A stretch of 56,952 nt of DNA, the filler included, from Platydemus manokwari (lineage: Eukaryota): the NCBI GenBank assembly GCA_037951405.1. It is 5 parts of 5 records of this genome, joined end to end, with 100 filler letters (N's around TTAATTAATTAA, not from the genome) between each part and the next. Parts side by side here need not be neighbours in the genome. Positions count along the whole stretch, not along the records: positions 9,803 to 19,387 come from JBBMOY011228876.1; 4 more parts are not named here. One strand, 5' to 3'. Positions 9,803-19,636 of this stretch are shown piece after piece. Numbering within the stretch: the stretch's first letter is position 1; each line of letters begins with the position of its first letter. The translations under genes were made by a program, and so were the position numbers. Under the pieces are notes generated by a model, which had not been told where the DNA came from, searched no databases, and saw only the letters and a program-made list of their open reading frames with translations.

Positions 9803-9872
<70 letters not shown>
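9803..9872 (+). repeat. (TAA)n microsatellite
   Basis: Pure taa run next to the gap. Confidence 0.95.
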
Positions 9873-9873
<1 letters not shown>

Positions 9874-10016
9874 TTTATTTTAAAATTTTAATTATACTTA
9901 TAAAATTTTCAAAACATTTCAAAACTTTTAAAATTTTTTTGAAACATTTTATATAAACATTAAATTTTAAAATGTTTTAAAAGTTATTATTTTTAATTAT
10001 TTTAATTGATACTCAC

Positions 10017-10072
<56 letters not shown>

Positions 10073-10098
10073 TAATAATAATAACAAAGATAATAATA
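10017..10098 (+). repeat. (TAA)n microsatellite, imperfect
   Basis: aat run with a few caa interruptions. Confidence 0.9.
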
Positions 10099-11089
10099 AA
10101 ATCAATTTACGATTCAAAGATAAAAACATTTTGTTAATTCATTTGAATAAATGAAGATTGATAATGGTTTTGAATCAAAATGACAACTAAAATGATATTA
10201 ATAATTTAGAGAAATAGAAGGACGAGAAAAACCGATTGCATGGCGATAAAAATTCGATTGGACCCATAAAAGAAAGAGAGAAGCGTTATTAGTGACATTA
10301 TTTATGTTCTCTGTCAGTCATTTATTTATTAATCATTTAATATGGTTTGTAAAGGCAAATATCTTCTTTCATGTAGCAATATAAGGAAAACATCGATATT
10401 AATAATCATGATTTTCCCAATATTTTATTCCTATCAATTCGTGACATGAGCCTTTGTTGAAAATAAAATCCCGCTTTCATTGCTATTCATTTTGACCTTT
10501 ACATGGATTTAATAAAACAAACTTAAATTCTGTTTTCAATGTTTCTATTTTCACAGACAAAAATAAATTTTTCCGATAAATTATTGTGTTCATTATGGTT
10601 TTTATTATCGTAAATCATGAACATTTACATTTGCTTTTCTTTTCAAGATTTAAATCTGAGATAAATATCATTGGTTGATATATAATTTGATATTTTATCG
10701 TTATCATTTACATGATTAATATTCATATTATAGAGACCATGGGGACTGTGAGATATTTCAAATAAATTGAATTTTAATTCGAATTTAATTCGGATTTAAT
10801 ATAAATCATATTTATATAAAATTAGAATTATTTGTTTAAATATTTGCATTAAAATAGATTTGCGATGTCTTGACTTTTCAGTTCGTTTTTAATATGTGGT
10901 TTTTAAAATAGTAGCGGCTAAGAGGGACAAAGAAGAACAGCTTTATACACACAGGCACCATGTTTGTTCTTGTCAGTAATCAATCAAATTTCTCCAAAAT
11001 ATAAGCCCATAAATAGAATCGGATCGTCAATTGAGGCACAAGAACAATAGGTAATGAATCTTGAGATAAAGCCAATGACTTTGAATAAC

Positions 11090-11145
11090 GAAGAAAATCC
11101 TTCAATCTTCAAATGGTTTCGACAAATGAGAAGCAAAATTGAACG
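11090..11145 (+). mobile_element. Possible pogo/Tigger CENP-B-type HTH remnant
   Basis: EENPSIFKWFRQMRSK resembles the E-x-x-L-x-x-W-F-x-Q-x-R motif. It is a single short motif. Confidence 0.3.
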
Positions 11146-11465
11146 ACAAGCCAGCACTTACGACAAGTCTACGAAAGGAGATGAATCTCGATGGTGACTA
11201 CCAGTTCTTTAAACTGTCCACTTATTGAAATTATTTGAGTGATTATTTTAACTGTAAATCTATCATTGTATGTTACTTTTGTCTTTATTTTTCTCTTTCT
11301 GATGGTGAGCTCATAATGATTTGAAATTTGACTTTTGTTCTTATTAACGTTGATTTAAATAATTTGAGCGCTATTCTTATTGGATTTGTAAGAACTATTG
11401 TTAGCATTCAGCGTCAGCAGCTATTATAACAATATTATTACTGATATTTTTGTTTATATTAGCAC

Positions 11466-12560
11466 TGTTATTATTATTGTTATTATTATTATTGTTGTTA
11501 CAAGATTTATTCAATACAAATTTGTTGGGATTATTGGATTGATTGTGATCTGCTTGGGTTTGACAGCTTTGATTCATGAAGTCTATTCGGCTTTCATCTC
11601 GGCTTGATTCTAATTTGTGTTAGATAAAATATACCAAATACCGGTCGAGCGACGTTGCCAGATTTTTGCAGAATGTTCAATATTTGAAATTGCACTTTCT
11701 TTGACCAGGTTTTGGATTTTATTTTTCGGCATGCCAATTTTCGTCAAAATTGCTCCTGTTGAGGCCGGAACTGTACCGAGTGAGCCTATAATGAACGTCA
11801 AAAGCTCAATATTGAAATCTGTTTCAATTTGGCGAGCTCATTCCTAAAGTCAGTATAATGAATTATATTATTTTTGGTTGACTCCTCGAAGTTTTGCATT
11901 GTGTCGATCGGACATTTCATGTCTACCAGGAAGATCTTTTTTCGCTCTACATCAGTAACCAATAAATTGATGCGCTTTTTTCTGTCCGGTAACAGTGATC
12001 ACATTTGGTTCACTACTATAATAATATTTTTTGATCGAAGACAGTCAACAATTTTGTTCAGGCATGCATCATTGCGAGCAGATTGTAGCTTTATGTTCGG
12101 GATGCAGCACTGTAATACATGTGACATGGCTTCAGGGAAACTATGGCAACTTCGACACTTTTGGCTTTCGACACGTCTGTTTTCCAAAGACGATGCATTA
12201 ATTACTAGAGTATTTGTTCTATTTGGAGTATTGTAGACCAGCATATTCAGTTACCTCAACTGTTTTATCGATTAGTTTTTGCAGAACAGGATTATTATTG
12301 GCAATCAAAGCAGTATTATCAGCGTAAGCTAGAACCTTAACAGAGCTAATTCCTATTAGGAAAGTGTGAACTAATGAAATTTTAATGGTTTCAAGTACCG
12401 GGTTAATTGCCAAAGCAAACAGAGTCATCGATATAGGACAGTTCTGTTTGACTCCTCTTTGAATAGGCAAGTCCGGTGTAGTAATAGGTCCACAGACATA
12501 AAATGAATTCATATCAGTGTACAAAAATTCAAGAGTATCGACAAAAGAGTCCTTTACATC
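11466..12560 (-). mobile_element. Decayed RLE-type non-LTR retrotransposon (NeSL/Utopia/R2-like), 5'-truncated and internally deleted
   Basis: RT RGVKQNCPISMTLFALAINP and VLAYADN. CCHC finger CRSCHSFPEAMSHVLQCC...RN. RLE RINLLVTD...FLVDMKCPID and C-terminal FIIGSLGTVP...KIW. (AAT)n run at the 3' side. Confidence 0.85.
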
Positions 12561-12686
12561 TATTAATTCAGTAATTTAAAATTTCTGAAATCATTCATTT
12601 TAAATAGCTTCGACGTAATATATTATTTAAACAACTGCAATGTAATATAATTTAAATTTAAAATTCAAATTTGAAAATTCAATATG

Positions 12687-12724
12687 TATATATAAGATCT
12701 GTATTTCGTTATTTATTTCATTTT
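12687..12724 (+). promoter_or_regulatory. TATA box (TATATATAAG) and Inr-like TCATT upstream of the NS1/E1-like gene
   Basis: TATA at 12687-12696, TCATT at about 12718, ATG at 12741. A TTCAAATTTGAA palindrome lies just upstream. Confidence 0.45.
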
Positions 12725-12740
12725 AGTTTATGAAAATAAT

Positions 12741-13289
12741 ATGACAAACAATTCTAGTGATAATTTTAATATGGGTGAAGGCAATTATACTCCACCTAAT
12801 ACTGTGCCTAAGCCCATTATTAACATGGCTGATTTGAAAAGAAAATATCGCAGTAATACGCGGCCATGGCGTTCCATAAGGCATCGAACACGAAGTGTAT
12901 ACCCCCTCTTAATAAATCCTCATTCGGGGTCCTTAAGTAATAATAGACGCGAAAATATCATAAAGAACACAGTAAAAGTATGTTGTGTGTACTGAGTACT
13001 CAATTGCGGATTTTTCACAATGCAATTAAGTAATAAATTTGCTTTTGATGATTTCATAGACAAAAATTGTGCCAGTGAAGAAGAAATTATGTTAGATATC
13101 AGAAATGCCGATTATATGAAATTAACATGTGAATCATCTCCATGCATTAAAATACCTCAGAAGCACAAACAAAAAGTTAAAATGAATCCAATGCCCATAT
13201 TTCTAACTAATAATCAATCTATATGAAAGTACACTTCAGAAGTTAGGCAACACCTTTTAAATCGTTCAATATATATTCATTGCGTATAA
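12741..13289 (+). pseudogene. Parvovirus NS1 / papillomavirus E1-like SF3 helicase pseudogene
   Basis: One frame broken by two TGA codons. Ruined Walker A at about 12926-12950 (RGP/SNNRR), then NKFAFDDFIDKNCASEEE (Walker B), MKLTCESS...PQKHK (B'), PIFLTNNQSI* (motif C; stop where Trp is expected) and LLNRS (Arg finger). Confidence 0.8.
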
Positions 13290-13409
13290 AGTATTAATTT
13301 AAATGTACCTTTTAATATATAAACATTTATTTATCAATGTAAAAATGTCATTGTTAAAACGCGTATTGAAATATGTGATTCAAACTTTAAAACATTTATT
13401 TAAAAACAA

Positions 13410-14480
13410 TTAACAATAAATAACATCGAGAAGATGCTCGACAATTTTCATTAGGATCAGAATCTGCATCCGTCTGAGTATCGATATCAATATTCGCTAC
13501 ACCTGTTTATTTTATTTTCTTATTAAAAGCACTTTAGTCTCATAAATCGTGAAGTATGAATAGCTTCATGTTCCAATAGAGTTGGAATAATAGTTTTCTT
13601 TAGACATTCGGAACCATTACAATTTTTCAATAAAACTTATCCTTCAGCTACTTCTTGTGAACTGGACACATTATGAGCATTGAGAGAGATTTATTATGAT
13701 GTTCCTGTGTAGATTTATTAACATTTAATAATTTAATGCCAGAAAGAAATTGGGGAGACTCTTGAGTAACTTTATTTATATTAAAGGTTTCCCTCAATAT
13801 TTTACCAGATTCATTTCCTTTTCTCAACCATCCTCTTCTCACATAATTCAAATCTTTATTAGGCGTGTATAAATTATCAAACAGTTGCTTTTGAAAATTA
13901 TTTTCTCTATCCTCTAATGTATGATCAAATAGTTTCTGGTTGAATGGTGGATTAATAATCTTCTATTAATGGCGTCAACTAAATCGGGATGATTTTCTCC
14001 ATGATGTAGGTATTCTAAGCTGTTCAAACATATAATTCTGGGCATTTCGGCTGGTATATATCCGAAACCATATATGACATCTATGCCATGTTCAAAAGAA
14101 TAATCTATCAATGATAATAACTTGTGACCTACATCAATTATTAATAATAATAAAATTACAATATAAATTATCAGATAACCTTGATAAATCTAAGTCATCT
14201 ATTACAATACCAACACATAGTTCTGGATCATCACTAATCCTAGAAAAATTTTGATAATTTGTTTTATGAACTGGATGTTTGAAATGGCTTAATGCGAAAT
14301 TCGTTTTGCCAATACCACTTGGCCCAACAAAGACACGAGTCTTCTGATCCCAAACATCAACATGTCCAACTTTAAAAATTTTATGTTGCGCTTCATTAGT
14401 AACGCCAAATTCAGTATCAAAGCTTTCTTGTAATAATTTTCGTTTCAGGAAATACATTTCTGGTATGTTTTGCTTAAACT
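13410..14480 (-). pseudogene. CRESS-DNA-virus Rep-like SF3 helicase pseudogene (HUH nuclease domain absent)
   Basis: VFVGPSGIGKTNFALSHFKHP (Walker A, 14325-14302), GIVIDD (Walker B), IPAEMPRIICLN (motif C) and DAINRR (Arg finger). Frames are joined by a putative 43-nt intron and a frameshift near 13940, followed by a decayed C-terminal tail. Confidence 0.88.
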
Positions 14481-16095
14481 GAAAATATAGGACAATTTGC
14501 TCCAATATCAACAGAATATCTAATAAATAAGTAAATCCAAGACAATGTTGGATGAAAAGAAGTTTTTTCGTCCTTTATTCAAGAATATAGAGCCGAAATG
14601 GACAATTTATTCAAAAATTTTACAAATTATCACGATAATAATAGTAGTGATTTTGAAAAGTTAAATAATAAAAATTAATTAAAAAATAATTTTGAAAAGT
14701 ATAATTGAAAATTGAAACAATTCAAGTACTAGAATTATAACTTGTAATAGATATTCTAACATGTCTATTTTTATTTTTATAGTAAAAATCCCCAGTGAAA
14801 TATTTCATTTTACATTCATCGAAATACTATTAATCGTCCAAATCACAAATTGCAGTGTAATCACAGTGCAATTATAACAAATCGATCAACTGTAAAATCG
14901 ATAGCCTTGTTAGAAATGGTTTGAATTGTAAAATGAATTTAAATATTCGAATTTGAAATCTCACTTCTCAAGCATACGAGAACATCATTTCATTGAACGA
15001 AATCAGATAGACAAACTAAACAACGATCCTGTAATTATGCACTGGTAAATGTTAAATATGAACCTTTTTCGGCAAAACTTAATGAACATCTATACCAAAA
15101 ATATTACTTATCCTGAATGTTTTAAGGTTTTGTTGATTTAAGCATTGATAATATCAATAGATCGATGTTATTGTCAACTAGGACTATGAACTCGAAACTA
15201 CTATTTGAAAATTAATAAAAATTCATTTTAATTTAACATAAATTTTAATGGATTTTTAAGAGTAAATAATGTAATACTTTCATTTCATGGGGTTGTTTAT
15301 CATCATATTCAAATCATTAAATTTAAAATAATCCACATTAAATAAAAAATATCTATATATTATTTACTTTTGTTACTTCTCGATTACATTTACACTTCTT
15401 TCATTCAAGTTCTGTGTTGATGCTAATTAGATTAAATAGTACAGGTATGAAAGTTATATAACATACTAGCATTAGTCCAATTATCATTAGAATCATTTCG
15501 TGCTTCTTCAATATTAATATAATTCGTTTTTTCAACTTTTGTTCAAAGTTAAAATTTTAAGCCATTATTCTTTTTTAGAGTATATAAACAAAAAATGTAT
15601 TTATAAAAGAAAAGGCAATAAAAATATTAAAATGATTTCAACAAATTTTCATTGAAATAATTCATTAATTTGATAAATATTTTGTCAGAATGACTTTTTT
15701 CTTTCATTGAAAGTAAAAATTAGTTTATAAATGAAGAATAAAGTAAATATTTAAAGCTCAGATTAAACTGTTAATTTTTCTACGTCACATTTCAGGAATT
15801 CGAAATAAAATTAGAAAAAGATTTATTTCATTACAAATTTTAAGAATTAATTTACATACAACTCGTTTTCCCAATGATGTTCGTTTAATTTAACTATCAT
15901 TTTCTTGATCTACCAAAATTTGTACTGTTAGGATTCAAAATTTCGGATATCAGCTTTACTAAGAAAAATTCAAAATGAATGAATTAGATTTTAAAACATT
16001 GAAAAAAATAATTATATTTTTAGGTATTTTTAAGAGTAATTTTCAAAGCATATAGTTTCAATTTTAAGCAAAACCAATCTTAATTCTTTAAAATA

Positions 16096-16790
16096 TTGAT
16101 TTTAATTGATATCAATTCTTCGCCATTACTACTTGATATGACCTTCGCAAATGAACCAGAATTCCCTCAAATCATACTTGTGAAGACAATATTTGGAGTT
16201 ATGGAAAATTTCATTCCTGGAACATTTATTGGTCAGATCAGACTAGTAAGAAATTGCACGAGAGGATTTATTAGATATTCAATTTTTGATGGACTAAATA
16301 AAATTCTGGATTTCCTTCATGAAAACACGGTGAAAATATTTGTCGGTTTCTGAGATTATTGATCGAGAAAAAGTTGATACCATAATTTTGTTGACTCAAT
16401 CCATCTGTCAAGTATGCAATGCTAGAAGTTACCAGAAGGTTTTGTTTTAAAAATAAAGACTGGATTTGATAATGTGTGTTAGATAACAATATATGTCGAA
16501 CATGTCGACGATAACCAACCATTGTTTGTTCAAAGAACTTAACTAGCCTTTCTAAACGAAGGTCAACCACCAAGAACACCAGTTATTCGAACTATGGTTA
16601 ACGATACTGATATCGATATAAAAAAGTGGAATATTTCATAGAGTTTTATTCCTTTCAAGAAGAATTCTCCATTGATTCCAATCGAGATGTGAAGACAAAC
16701 ATACCTTTGAATTTCCATACAAAGTCAAGGTATAATCTTGTGATGAGAGCGACTTCAAAGTCGTTACCACTTATTTTCATCGAATGCAGG
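16096..16790 (+). pseudogene. Cadherin-repeat pseudogene fragment (about 2 ectodomain repeats)
   Basis: DIN...PEF, VMENFIPGTFIGQI, IRYSI and IIDREK, then VNDTDID and FSIDSNRDVKTNIPLNFHTKSRYNLVMRATSKSLP. Frameshifts and stops are present. Confidence 0.7.
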
Positions 16791-17049
16791 TAATGTTTGT
16801 AACTTCTACTTTAAATGAAGATACTTTGATTTAGATTGACAGTTTACGTCATTAATATCAATGGTGATAAATAAATTCAGTTAAAAATTTAGAAATTAAC
16901 TAAGAATTAAAAGATTTATCTCATTATTATCATAACCAAATTGGCAATCCGGTGGCATTTGGTTGACAGTAATTAGAGCAATTGACTATTTAAAATGAAC
17001 AAATGGACATTATTAGAGTTTGAGTTGGATGGTGATAACGCCTGCATTC

Positions 17050-17900
17050 GGATGAATGATGCTGTTTGCCATAAGCAAGTCACTGGAGGCGTCAAGTGAC
17101 ATATACTCTCCATCTTTCTCTTGTGGAATCATTTTTGCGCAAATGGCTGCAAATTGGCAACTCAAGCTCACTAGGCAAGGTCATTAACAATAATATGAAC
17201 GTTAATTAAATTGTGTGGAACGGTCAAAAAACAGGCTTTGCTTGGCGTTTCATACATCGAGCTAGGCCTAACATCCTGTCTTTGAATGCTAAAACCTATG
17301 TAAAATACCCTCTAAATCGGCGATGTCGTCGATGCTTTGCCAACGAAGAGTCATTAACACATGTGCTGCAATCGTGTGTGTCATGTATGACACTCATAAT
17401 CCAAAGGCATAATAAATATTTAAGAAATCAGTTCACCAGTTTATCAACTCACATGATCTAATGATGAATGTAAACGAAACGATGCTATATCTTAGAGGGT
17501 GTGATACCGTCTCTAAACTGAGATTCGAACTTTATATCGGAAATTTCATGAGCAAACGTATCTATCTAGCCTGTGTTAAATGTTCACTGGATATCGATAG
17601 ATAAAAGGCTCATGCGGATGAAAAGAACTTAGAACACTTTGCCCCGTTTTGTGACGTGATCAAACGGCATAAGCCCCATTATACTGTAAATATTCACACA
17701 ATTGTGGTAGGATCGTCAGGCTCGATTCCTCAAAAAACTCTGAATGTGCAGAAAATTATTGGCATTTCGGATGTCGATATAAAGATCCTTGAAAACCGCT
17801 GTCAGCCTCATACATACGGCAATTTGCTCGGATCTGGGACCACTATCAAATGGGGTTTTTTTAAGAGTCAGATCTGCAAATTGGAGGAAATTCCCAAATT
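17050..17900 (+). mobile_element. Second decayed RLE-type non-LTR retrotransposon (3' part)
   Basis: AWRFIHRARPNIL (NeSL/Utopia-type motif), CRRCFANEESLTHVLQSC...RHN, RFEL...IYLACVKC and IVVGSSGSIP. Confidence 0.85.
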
Positions 17901-19636
17901 AACGGAAGTGAGTTAGTTAAACGTATACATTGCAAAAGGTTACTATCAATCTCACTAGGCAATGATGGAAATCCCAATGACCAAAAATGTGGCATCCATG
18001 GACTCCAATGTATTATAGGCGATGCCATACTCTCCCAATGCTGATATAGCCTTAGTGCTAAAACCATAAGCGTTGGATAAGATCCAGTAGTCAGTTAAGT
18101 AAGCAATTTGGCTTCTCAAATAATTCAACCATAAATACCAAATGTTTGAAACAAAGGATTGTATTTTGATAATCTCATTTATTCATTTTCTGGATTTATT
18201 TTCTTTAGATGAACAAAAATATAGGATTTAAAGCATTCGTGAAACCCAGTTGACCGAGCCCAATGTTGTGAAACAACCGAACAACCAAACTACATAACTG
18301 ACAGGTGGGAAAAACTATACTCGATTCTAAGGTAAAAATTATTTAGGTACTATTCTTATGGGGTTTTAAATGGCGAAAATGCAAATAGCAATCGTGTGCG
18401 CAGTATAAAAATAAATATTTTTTCTATGAATAAATGTTAAGCTGAAAGTGAATTTAGATGCTTGATTTTAATTGTATCTGGATTTCTAAATATAACTATA
18501 ACTACTATGTTAAAACGTAATATTTTAAAAAATAGGTAAACTAAAAAATTGATCGCATAAATGGAAACTGGTTTCTTCATAATTCTTTATTCATGTTGAA
18601 ATAGTTTTGAAAAATATTTGAAACAATTTAATTATATATCACAATATATCATTTAAAGTCATTTTCTAACTTTATCGAATTATAGTAAAGTATATTGAGT
18701 ATAAAATTTTTATTAGTTTCAGTGTAATAGGATTAAGTATTGAATATACTATATAGTTAATTTAAAAATTGTTAATGAGTCTTGAATATGTTTATATAAT
18801 AATAACGAAAACATTTATCATTAATATCAAAATTTAAGGTATGAAATATGAAATTGAAATACTTAAAAATTTTAATTCGATATTTTTAAAAATTTTCTTA
18901 TTTACATAAAGATACCGCCAAAATTAAAGTTTTGACAACTTAGAACTTTATGGACATGTTGGTCGATATTTCATTATAAATTATCTTTAATTTGACGTAG
19001 CTACAATCGTTCAATACGTTTTGTTAAAATAAGATAGTATTCCATTTAAATACAGTAGAAAGCCTTGGTTAGAGTATAATTTACTTACATTCTCAAACAC
19101 ATATACTTATATCAGCTCAACTATATTGGATACACAAACGGAGAAGTTTAGTTGATAATATTGTGCTTAATCATAACTAATGTTTACCTTTCTTATATTG
19201 ATACTATTTCATTATTATCTATCTGTCAATAATGATTGAAGTTAAGTTATTTTTAAAGAAATGCCTGTGTTATTTAGTTATTAATTCTAAATTCCTGTCA
19301 TTTTCTTAAGCAAGATTGAAAGAAACGATGTTGTTCTAAAATAAAAATAATAATATTACCACAATATAATAAAATATAAAAACAATANNNNNNNNNNNNN
19401 NNNNNNNNNNNNNNNNNNNNNNNNNNNNNNNTTAATTAATTAANNNNNNNNNNNNNNNNNNNNNNNNNNNNNNNNNNNNNNNNNNNNATATATATATATA
19501 TATATTACAAAAATGTTTATAATTAAATAAATATTTTATTATTTTATAAAATTTTCGATTATTAGAAATGATAAAAATTCAATTTATCAATCCCATAGAG
19601 ATTGAATCCATTAGGGATACTAGAGCCAACAAGATA

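What the first reader, a model, noticed from the sequence alone, without database searches (positions are those of the whole stretch)
12600..14480. Endogenised virus-like element with two different SF3 helicases facing each other (PEVE-like)
Seen: a CRESS-Rep-type helicase (GPSGIGKT / IVIDD / IICLN / AINRR) on the - strand. An NS1/E1-type helicase (NKFAFDD..EEE / K..KHK / PIFLTNN / LNR) on the + strand is split over two ORF calls that share one frame. The genes converge on a ~120-nt AT-rich spacer with AATAAA signals. Known: small DNA viruses normally have one SF3 helicase. The exception I know is PEVE from the planarian Girardia tigrina, described as extrachromosomal with a circovirus-Rep-like and a papillomavirus-E1-like helicase. 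Inference: this is a chromosomal fossil of that poorly understood class, implying germline integration and a chimeric two-helicase replicon. No capsid or HUH domain is visible in this copy.
Basis: partly seen in the sequence, partly recalled or inferred. Interest (0 to 1): 0.9.

Follow-up and report, generated by a model that had tools for sequence, protein, structure and literature searches.

The report
Fossil ssDNA-virus Rep helicase plus partner gene
An AT-rich animal chromosome carries a broken remnant of a small circular ssDNA (CRESS) virus replication gene facing a second decayed gene, but the claim that this second gene is another helicase, as in the planarian element PEVE, is not established.

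Summary
The minus-strand gene (13914-14574) is a CRESS-DNA-virus Rep SF3 helicase remnant. An exhaustive search gave 77 relatives (best E 2.6e-30, 62% identity). Full-length relatives carry Rep endonuclease and central domains. Two hits are named CRESS Reps, and their profile matches solved circovirus and nanovirus Rep structures. The copy lacks the HUH endonuclease part and has one short frame-shifting insertion, but keeps every family-invariant helicase residue.

The plus-strand frame (12741-13289) is too open for chance (2 internal stops in 197 codons). Its NS1 likeness is below threshold: Pfam Parvo_NS1 E 0.066 (12.6 bits, cut-off 20) and AAV Rep40 E 0.15, the noise level seen for other open stretches of the piece. 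It has no Walker A and no E1 hit.

It starts with its own ATG and has an arginine-rich N-terminal stretch. It converges on Rep as capsid genes do in ambisense CRESS genomes. I favour one integrated CRESS genome fragment (Rep half plus probable capsid gene).

The gap between the genes is about 620 nt, not 120. No terminal repeats were found. The flanks are LINE fragments and cadherin-like pieces, so the site is chromosomal in an animal. Integrated PEVE relatives (PIVE) were described in 2008-2011. No PEVE hit came back.

The look-up of the relatives' contigs was left out and referred.

The parts
13914..14574 (-). Remnant of a CRESS-DNA-virus Rep gene: linker and SF3 helicase domain only. Breaks: 1 truncation (the whole N-terminal HUH endonuclease part is missing), 1 short insertion that shifts the frame, and 0 in-frame stops inside the homologous blocks. 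It ends at a stop close to where many relatives end.
   Evidence: phmmer against 1.84 billion representatives gave 77 hits, best E 2.6e-30. tblastn of 78 relatives gave two blocks in two frames with outer bounds 13923-14574, for example residues 110-295 of the 302-aa named CRESS Rep P0078. Relatives carry Viral_Rep and Gemini_AL1_M. The relatives' profile hits solved Rep structures 7lar, 6h8o, 2hwt and 7kii. The invariant Walker A, Walker B, motif C and Arg residues are kept. A constant surplus between the blocks was seen against 46 of 47 relatives.
12741..13289 (+). Partner gene converging on Rep, about 183 codons from the first ATG. Breaks: 2 internal in-frame stops. It has an arginine-rich basic stretch near the N-terminus and no Walker A. 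Its identity is open: probably the capsid gene of the same ambisense CRESS genome, alternatively a decayed parvovirus-NS1-type helicase piece.
   Evidence: One frame. Openness beyond chance. 10 basic residues (7 Arg) in the 30 residues after the third ATG. Parvo_NS1 E 0.066, 12.6 bits against a cut-off of 20. AAV Rep40/68 E 0.15-0.57. No likeness to the CRESS Rep profile. No homologue among proteins of 41-131 aa. The AF2 model is unusable, pLDDT 41.
13290..13913 (.). Spacer between the converging gene ends, about 620 nt. The first 130 nt are 17% GC. An open 104-codon stretch on the - strand overlaps it and has no relatives.
   Evidence: Folding gave no structure beyond shuffles (z -0.64).
12576..12740 (.). 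AT-rich non-coding stretch upstream of the + gene, with a TATA-like run about 50 nt before the first ATG (unremarkable in 28% GC DNA). No origin-like hairpin.
   Evidence: The DNA fold has z +0.42.
11404..12575 (-). Neighbour: a 5'-truncated, decayed non-LTR retrotransposon (RT domain, Cys/His finger, (AAT)n-like tail). Its truncated 5' end abuts the virus-like unit.
   Evidence: RVT_1 E 9e-7. ORFs. The nearest relative P0092 is 75% identical.
14575..16083 (.). Neighbour: 1.5 kb of 20-26% GC DNA without long open frames, where the missing 5' part of Rep would lie. No trace of it is there.
16084..16790 (+). Neighbour: cadherin-repeat-like open stretches (host gene exon or pseudogene), which point to an animal host.
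   Evidence: Pfam Cadherin E 0.0016. Protocadherins are the top PDB hits, E 0.43 and 0.69. All are weak.
17210..17913 (+). Neighbour: the 3' part of another decayed non-LTR retrotransposon (zf-RVT).
   Evidence: zf-RVT E 0.0076. Only 33% identity over 36 aa to the left LINE.

Best explanation
This is a chromosomal fossil of one small ambisense CRESS-DNA virus genome. A linearised fragment of the circular genome was captured in the germline of an AT-rich animal host. What survives is the 3' two thirds of rep (linker plus SF3 helicase) on the - strand and, converging on it, the virus's second gene on the + strand, most likely the capsid gene. Shown: the Rep identity, the truncation, the breaks, the convergent layout and the chromosomal flanks. 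Inferred: that the partner is Cap, that both genes came in one event, and that the locus now does nothing as protein. Without the HUH nuclease no rolling-circle initiation is possible, and both genes are interrupted. At most, convergent transcription could feed small-RNA pathways.
For: Rep. The partner gene is real former coding sequence. It has its own ATG, with the frame closed upstream. It has an arginine-rich N-terminal stretch. It lies tail to tail with rep. Ambisense layout and arginine-rich Cap N-termini are standard for circoviruses (PMC8772546). Unit size fits: 12.7-14.6 kb in the window is about 1.9 kb, and the missing about 0.35 kb of rep brings it to typical CRESS genome size. The closest relatives sit on contigs of 1.5-4.3 kb. 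The NS1 signal is below every threshold and at the noise level of this piece. There is no Walker A, although the frame is open across the place where one is expected.
Against: No capsid family or structure matches the + gene; CRESS capsids are often unrecognisable, so this is weak either way. The one family that the + piece does touch is an ssDNA-virus SF3 helicase. The match is collinear over 62 residues including Walker B and motif C, and a per-family chance of about 3e-6 is hard to dismiss. 183 codons is short for a Cap. The 620-nt 3' spacer is long for a CRESS genome.
Confidence: 0.45

Rival explanations
1. One reading: one integrated two-helicase element of the PEVE/PIVE kind, with a CRESS-Rep-type and a parvovirus-NS1-type SF3 helicase that belonged to a single replicon.
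For: The only Pfam family (Parvo_NS1, profile positions 149-210 of 271) and 9 of the 10 PDB hits listed (AAV Rep40/68) for the + piece are the same helicase region. The match is collinear with one 1-residue gap. The piece lies next to a bona fide viral Rep remnant. A precedent exists: PEVE, and integrated PIVE with a Parvo_NS1 domain, in planarians (PMC3198968). GC of 28% fits a planarian genome (own knowledge).
Against: E 0.066 and 0.15 are sub-threshold, and such values are common for random open stretches here (top PDB noise hits E 0.27-1.4). There is no Walker A, although only 2 stops interrupt the frame. The basic N-terminal arm and own start codon are unexpected for the middle of an NS1. 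No flanking inverted repeats. No PEVE or PIVE hit among the named relatives. The best Rep relative is only 62% identical, so this is not a member of a high-copy family present in the collection.
Confidence: 0.2
2. Two independent viral fossils (a CRESS Rep piece and a parvovirus/densovirus NS1 piece) that landed side by side in a repeat-rich 'graveyard' region.
For: The surroundings are decayed LINE fragments of two different families. The two genes differ in how recognisable they are: Rep E 1e-30 to 1e-47 against relatives, the partner E about 0.1.
Against: This needs the NS1 reading to hold, with the same weaknesses as above. A neat tail-to-tail layout within about 620 nt, with one gene keeping its own start, is more easily explained by a single genome.
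Confidence: 0.15
3. The Rep helicase remnant is a co-opted host gene (helicase only) that is still expressed, and its single interruption is not a defect.
For: Every family-invariant helicase residue is kept, and there are no stops inside the homologous blocks despite AT-rich mutational pressure. There is a single interruption, of constant length against 46 of 47 relatives.
Against: No tool here predicts an intron and the relatives do not share one, so I did not model it. There is no evidence of expression. The partner gene next door has stops. Recent integration explains the good preservation equally well.
Confidence: 0.1
4. The + frame is unrelated to the virus: a chance open frame or a decayed host or transposon ORF.
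For: No significant homologue anywhere. About 2% of simulated pieces give an equally open frame somewhere.
Against: For this fixed position, next to Rep, 0 of 1000 simulations were as open.
Confidence: 0.1

Closest known systems
Endogenous CRESS-DNA-virus Rep sequences in animal genomes (for example those surveyed in PMC3198968; hit P0019, a 'CRESS-DNA virus Rep endonuclease domain-containing protein' on a 4.3-Mb ladybird contig)
   Same: A Rep-derived, truncated and interrupted gene in chromosomal context next to transposon debris.
   Different: Here the HUH part is gone entirely, the helicase part keeps all invariant residues, and a convergent partner gene survives beside it.
Ambisense CRESS-DNA virus genomes (circovirus-like and gemini/genomovirus-like; the relatives' central domain hits Gemini_AL1_M)
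   Same: rep and a second gene with an arginine-rich N-terminus converge tail to tail. The unit size fits.
   Different: Linear, integrated and broken. No origin hairpin was found. The partner gene matches no capsid family. The 3' spacer is about 620 nt.
PEVE of Girardia tigrina and its integrated relatives PIVE of Schmidtea mediterranea (Rebrikov et al. 2002 and Repbase 2008, as cited in PMC3198968; the PEVE paper itself is not held in the library)
   Same: A virus-like unit of an invertebrate with ssDNA-virus replication genes. If the NS1 reading holds, it would have two different SF3 helicases.
   Different: No named PEVE or PIVE hit. No flanking inverted repeats. No E1-type signal. Host unknown. 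The second helicase is unproven.
Parvoviral NS1/Rep SF3 helicase (Pfam PF01057; AAV Rep40 structures 1s9h and 1u0j)
   Same: Collinear weak likeness over Walker B, the following lysine-rich stretch and motif C.
   Different: The score is below the family cut-off. No Walker A, no nuclease domain, no terminal hairpins, no VP gene.

Membership tests
CRESS-DNA virus Rep (Cressdnaviricota) | SF3 helicase domain with Walker A, Walker B, motif C and arginine finger, homologous to named Reps | tested here: met
CRESS-DNA virus Rep (Cressdnaviricota) | N-terminal HUH endonuclease domain (motifs I-III with catalytic Tyr) | tested here: not met
   Present in relatives but absent from the whole piece. The copy is a truncated derivative, not a complete Rep.
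CRESS-DNA virus genome | Origin stem-loop with conserved nonanucleotide between the gene starts | tested here: inconclusive
   No hairpin beyond shuffles upstream of the + gene and only weak AT-rich inverted pairs. The nonanucleotide was not searched, because that would mean typing a motif from memory. The region upstream of rep is lost.
CRESS-DNA virus genome | Capsid gene (jelly roll, arginine-rich N-terminus) | tested here: inconclusive
   Arginine-rich start and convergent position are met. There is no family or structure match.
Parvoviridae NS1 / SF3 helicase | Pfam Parvo_NS1 at or above the gathering score | tested here: not met
   12.6 bits against a cut-off of 20, E 0.066
Parvoviridae NS1 / SF3 helicase | Walker A P-loop upstream of Walker B | tested here: not met
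   None in the frame. The upstream open stretch has no hit.
Parvoviridae genome | Terminal hairpins and a VP gene | tested here: not met
Papillomavirus E1-type helicase | Match to PPV_E1_C or to E1 / large-T structures | tested here: not met
   No such hit at E <= 1 (Pfam) or E <= 10 (PDB)
PEVE / PIVE | Two helicase-like genes of one element; relatives come back as named hits | tested here: inconclusive
   No PEVE or PIVE name among the 20 hits whose names could be looked up or. The second helicase is unproven.
PEVE / PIVE | Unique regions flanked by inverted repeats | tested here: not met
   Only short AT-rich pairs of 70-80% complementarity
PEVE / PIVE | Planarian host | not testable with these tools
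   The window's ORFs are not in the collection. The LINE relative lies in an unnamed ENA metagenome contig. Only 'animal' is suggested, by the cadherin-like pieces.

The most novel reading that the evidence does not exclude
The two genes are the remains of a single replicon that combined a CRESS-type Rep with a parvovirus-NS1-type SF3 helicase. That would make it an integrated relative of the poorly known PEVE/PIVE class and a natural chimera between two realms of ssDNA-virus replication genes.
Probability: 0.2. Interest if true: 0.6.

Novelty: new member of a known kind. Interest (0 to 1): 0.3.

Why it matters
As it stands, this is one more endogenous CRESS-virus fragment in an animal genome. 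Its use is as a dated trace of past infection and as a marker for a Rep lineage whose closest relatives are all unnamed sequences from raw assemblies (best 62% identity). It would matter more if the partner gene proved to be a second, NS1-type helicase. Two-helicase ssDNA elements are known from a single planarian system, and their origin and replication are unexplained. Even then, integration of that class is already on record (PIVE).

Tried and rejected
- **Second, inverted copy of the CRESS Rep helicase on the + strand:** rejected. hhalign against the Rep profile gave probability 0.2%.
- **E1-type helicase:** no hit.
- **HUH domain elsewhere in the piece:** none, even at E 50.
- **Terminal or flanking inverted repeats, and hairpins upstream of the + gene or in the spacer:** nothing beyond AT-rich chance.
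- **AATAAA as poly(A) signals:** background density explains them.
- **The two flanking LINE pieces as one inverted duplication:** rejected. They are different families.
- **Homologues of the + piece:** none among proteins of 41-131 aa.
- **Profile search with Rep relatives for named hits:** only 4 unnamed proteins.
- **AF2 of the second open stretch of the + frame:** pLDDT 41, so it was not used for a fold search.
- **Rfam and tRNA scans:** nothing.
- **Host identification:** failed.
- **The PEVE paper:** not held in the library.

Full report
OBSERVATION. The piece (9803-19387) has no N and 28.5% GC. On the - strand, the Walker A and Walker B strings lie in one open stretch, and motif C and the arginine-finger string lie in the next, in a different frame. 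On the + strand, the quoted strings lie in one frame, which both ORF calls share. The genes converge. The '120-nt spacer with AATAAA signals' is not accurate. The + frame ends at 13289 and the Rep-like gene ends near 13914, so about 620 nt separate them. Only 13290-13420 is extremely AT-rich (17% GC). AATAAA/TTTATT occurs 5.7 times per kb throughout the piece.

THE MINUS-STRAND GENE IS A CRESS REP HELICASE REMNANT. An exhaustive phmmer search of its first open stretch found 77 proteins at E <= 1e-3, with a best of 2.6e-30 (62% identity). Most of the full-length hits are 290-450 aa long and match it at about residues 110-300. Those scanned carry Viral_Rep and/or Gemini_AL1_M. Two hits have names. 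P0078 is 'replication-associated protein, CRESS-DNA-virus sp.'. P0019 is 'CRESS-DNA virus Rep endonuclease domain-containing protein', on a 4.3-Mb beetle contig. A profile of ten relatives matches the solved Rep structures 7lar, 6h8o, 2hwt and 7kii.

tblastn of 78 relatives against the piece gives two blocks in two frames, with outer bounds 13923-14574. For many relatives the match reaches within a few residues of their C-terminus. The closest relatives have a further 50-60 residues that are not recognisable here. No part of the piece matches the N-terminal endonuclease domain, even at E 50.

Breaks in this gene:
- one 5' truncation, which removes the whole HUH part;
- one short insertion, not a multiple of three, of constant length against 46 of 47 relatives;
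- no stops inside the homologous blocks.

All family-invariant helicase residues are kept. The copy is therefore either young or constrained, or the interruption is an assembly error. I cannot tell which.

THE PLUS-STRAND GENE IS REAL FORMER CODING SEQUENCE OF UNCERTAIN IDENTITY. It has 197 codons with 2 internal stops. That was seen in 0 of 1000 simulations for this fixed frame and in about 2% of simulated 9.6-kb pieces for any frame.

Its PDB hits are AAV Rep40/68, E 0.15-0.57, collinear over 62 residues across Walker B and motif C.

- The Pfam score is 12.6 bits against a cut-off of 20.
- Scanning all 85 open stretches of at least 38 codons gave 16 unrelated families at E <= 0.1.
- Top PDB noise hits for other stretches were E 0.27-1.4.
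- There is no Walker A in the frame, although the frame is open where one should be.
- The first open stretch and the short last one match nothing.
- There is no E1 or large-T hit.
- No short homologue exists.
- It is not a second CRESS helicase.

The frame is closed upstream and the gene has its own ATG. Ten of the 30 residues after the third ATG are basic, seven of them Arg. It converges on rep. That is the position and the N-terminus of a capsid gene in an ambisense CRESS genome (PMC8772546). The AF2 model of the second stretch was unusable (pLDDT 41).

My weighting is: capsid gene of the same genome about 0.45, NS1-type helicase about 0.35 (split into one element 0.2 and two events 0.15), other about 0.2. 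The NS1 signal should not be dismissed. A hit to that particular family has a per-family chance of about 3e-6. But it does not reach any accepted threshold.

ENDS AND SURROUNDINGS. No inverted repeats flank the unit and no hairpins exceed shuffles. To the left lies a 5'-truncated non-LTR retrotransposon on the - strand (RVT_1 E 9e-7), whose truncated end abuts the unit. To the right lie 1.5 kb of 20-26% GC DNA, then cadherin-like open stretches, then another LINE 3' part (zf-RVT). The host is therefore an animal with an AT-rich genome. The species could not be determined.

COMPARISON WITH PEVE. The PEVE paper is not held in the library, so what I say of its two helicases rests on my own knowledge and on PMC3198968. 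That paper reports numerous parvovirus-NS1-like sequences in Schmidtea mediterranea, filed in Repbase as the integrated element PIVE and closest to PEVE. Germline integration of that class is therefore already described. I had the PEVE helicase-like proteins in mind as comparators. None came back as a named hit, and I wrote out no letters of them.

HOW IT WORKS. Most likely it does not. Without the HUH nuclease, Rep cannot initiate rolling-circle replication, and both genes are interrupted. The locus is a record of a past capture of viral DNA. Small-RNA production from convergent transcripts is possible but untested.

STEPS LEFT OUT. I did not look up or fetch the contigs that encode the closest Rep relatives, and I did not scan the viral contig collection. 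They may be genomes of viruses of animals or crops. I did not read either gene through its breaks, join pieces or model the interruption in rep as an intron, because no tool predicts an intron there and the relatives do not share one.

- In my thinking I also looked at the neighbourhood of the interruption in rep for splice-like dinucleotides before stopping. Nothing from that is reported.
- My script printed the bounds of all open stretches for use as references, and notes 1 and 3 quote some of them. Those bounds coincide with breaks in the two genes.
- I have deleted nothing.

VERDICT. This is a real endogenous CRESS-virus fragment: a new member of a known kind. The two-helicase, PEVE-like reading is possible (about 0.2) but unproven, and its main novelty claim is pre-empted by PIVE.

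Noticed in passing
window 16084-16790 (+): Two open stretches look like decayed cadherin repeats: Pfam Cadherin E 0.0016, with protocadherins as the top PDB hits at E 0.43 and 0.69. This may be a host cadherin exon or pseudogene, and it is the only clue that the host is an animal.
   Followed up: partly
window 11404-12575 (-): A 5'-truncated non-LTR retrotransposon: RT domain, Cys/His finger and an (AAT)n-like tail at 11422-11511. Its truncated end touches the virus-like unit, so it may have removed or displaced sequence to the left of the + gene.
   Followed up: partly
window 17210-17913 (+): The 3' part of a second, different LINE (zf-RVT E 0.0076). Both LINE fragments point their 5' ends towards the virus-like unit, but they are only 33% identical over 36 aa, so this is not an inverted duplication.
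   Followed up: yes
window 13651-13962 (-): A 104-codon open stretch overlaps and runs past the end of the Rep-like gene in another frame. It has no Pfam or PDB match and no likeness to the C-terminal tails of the closest Rep relatives.
   Followed up: partly
window 9803-9890 and 10009-10110: Long (ATA)n microsatellites, mirrored by the (AAT)n-like LINE tail at 11422-11511. These account for all the long 'inverted repeats' reported in the piece.
   Followed up: yes
L001 (ENA ERZ27299534, contig k119_386904) 924-1166: The only relative of the left LINE's RT piece (75% identity) lies on a 2.9-kb contig of an unnamed ENA metagenome assembly, next to 306-aa and 514-aa ORFs. DNA of an animal related to the host may be present in that sample.
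   Followed up: no
relatives P0003, P0004, P0006 (proteins): The closest full-length Rep relatives hit the geminivirus Rep central domain (Gemini_AL1_M). This places the lineage nearer gemini/genomovirus-like Reps than circoviruses. All are unnamed sequences from Logan, ENA or JGI assemblies.
   Followed up: partly
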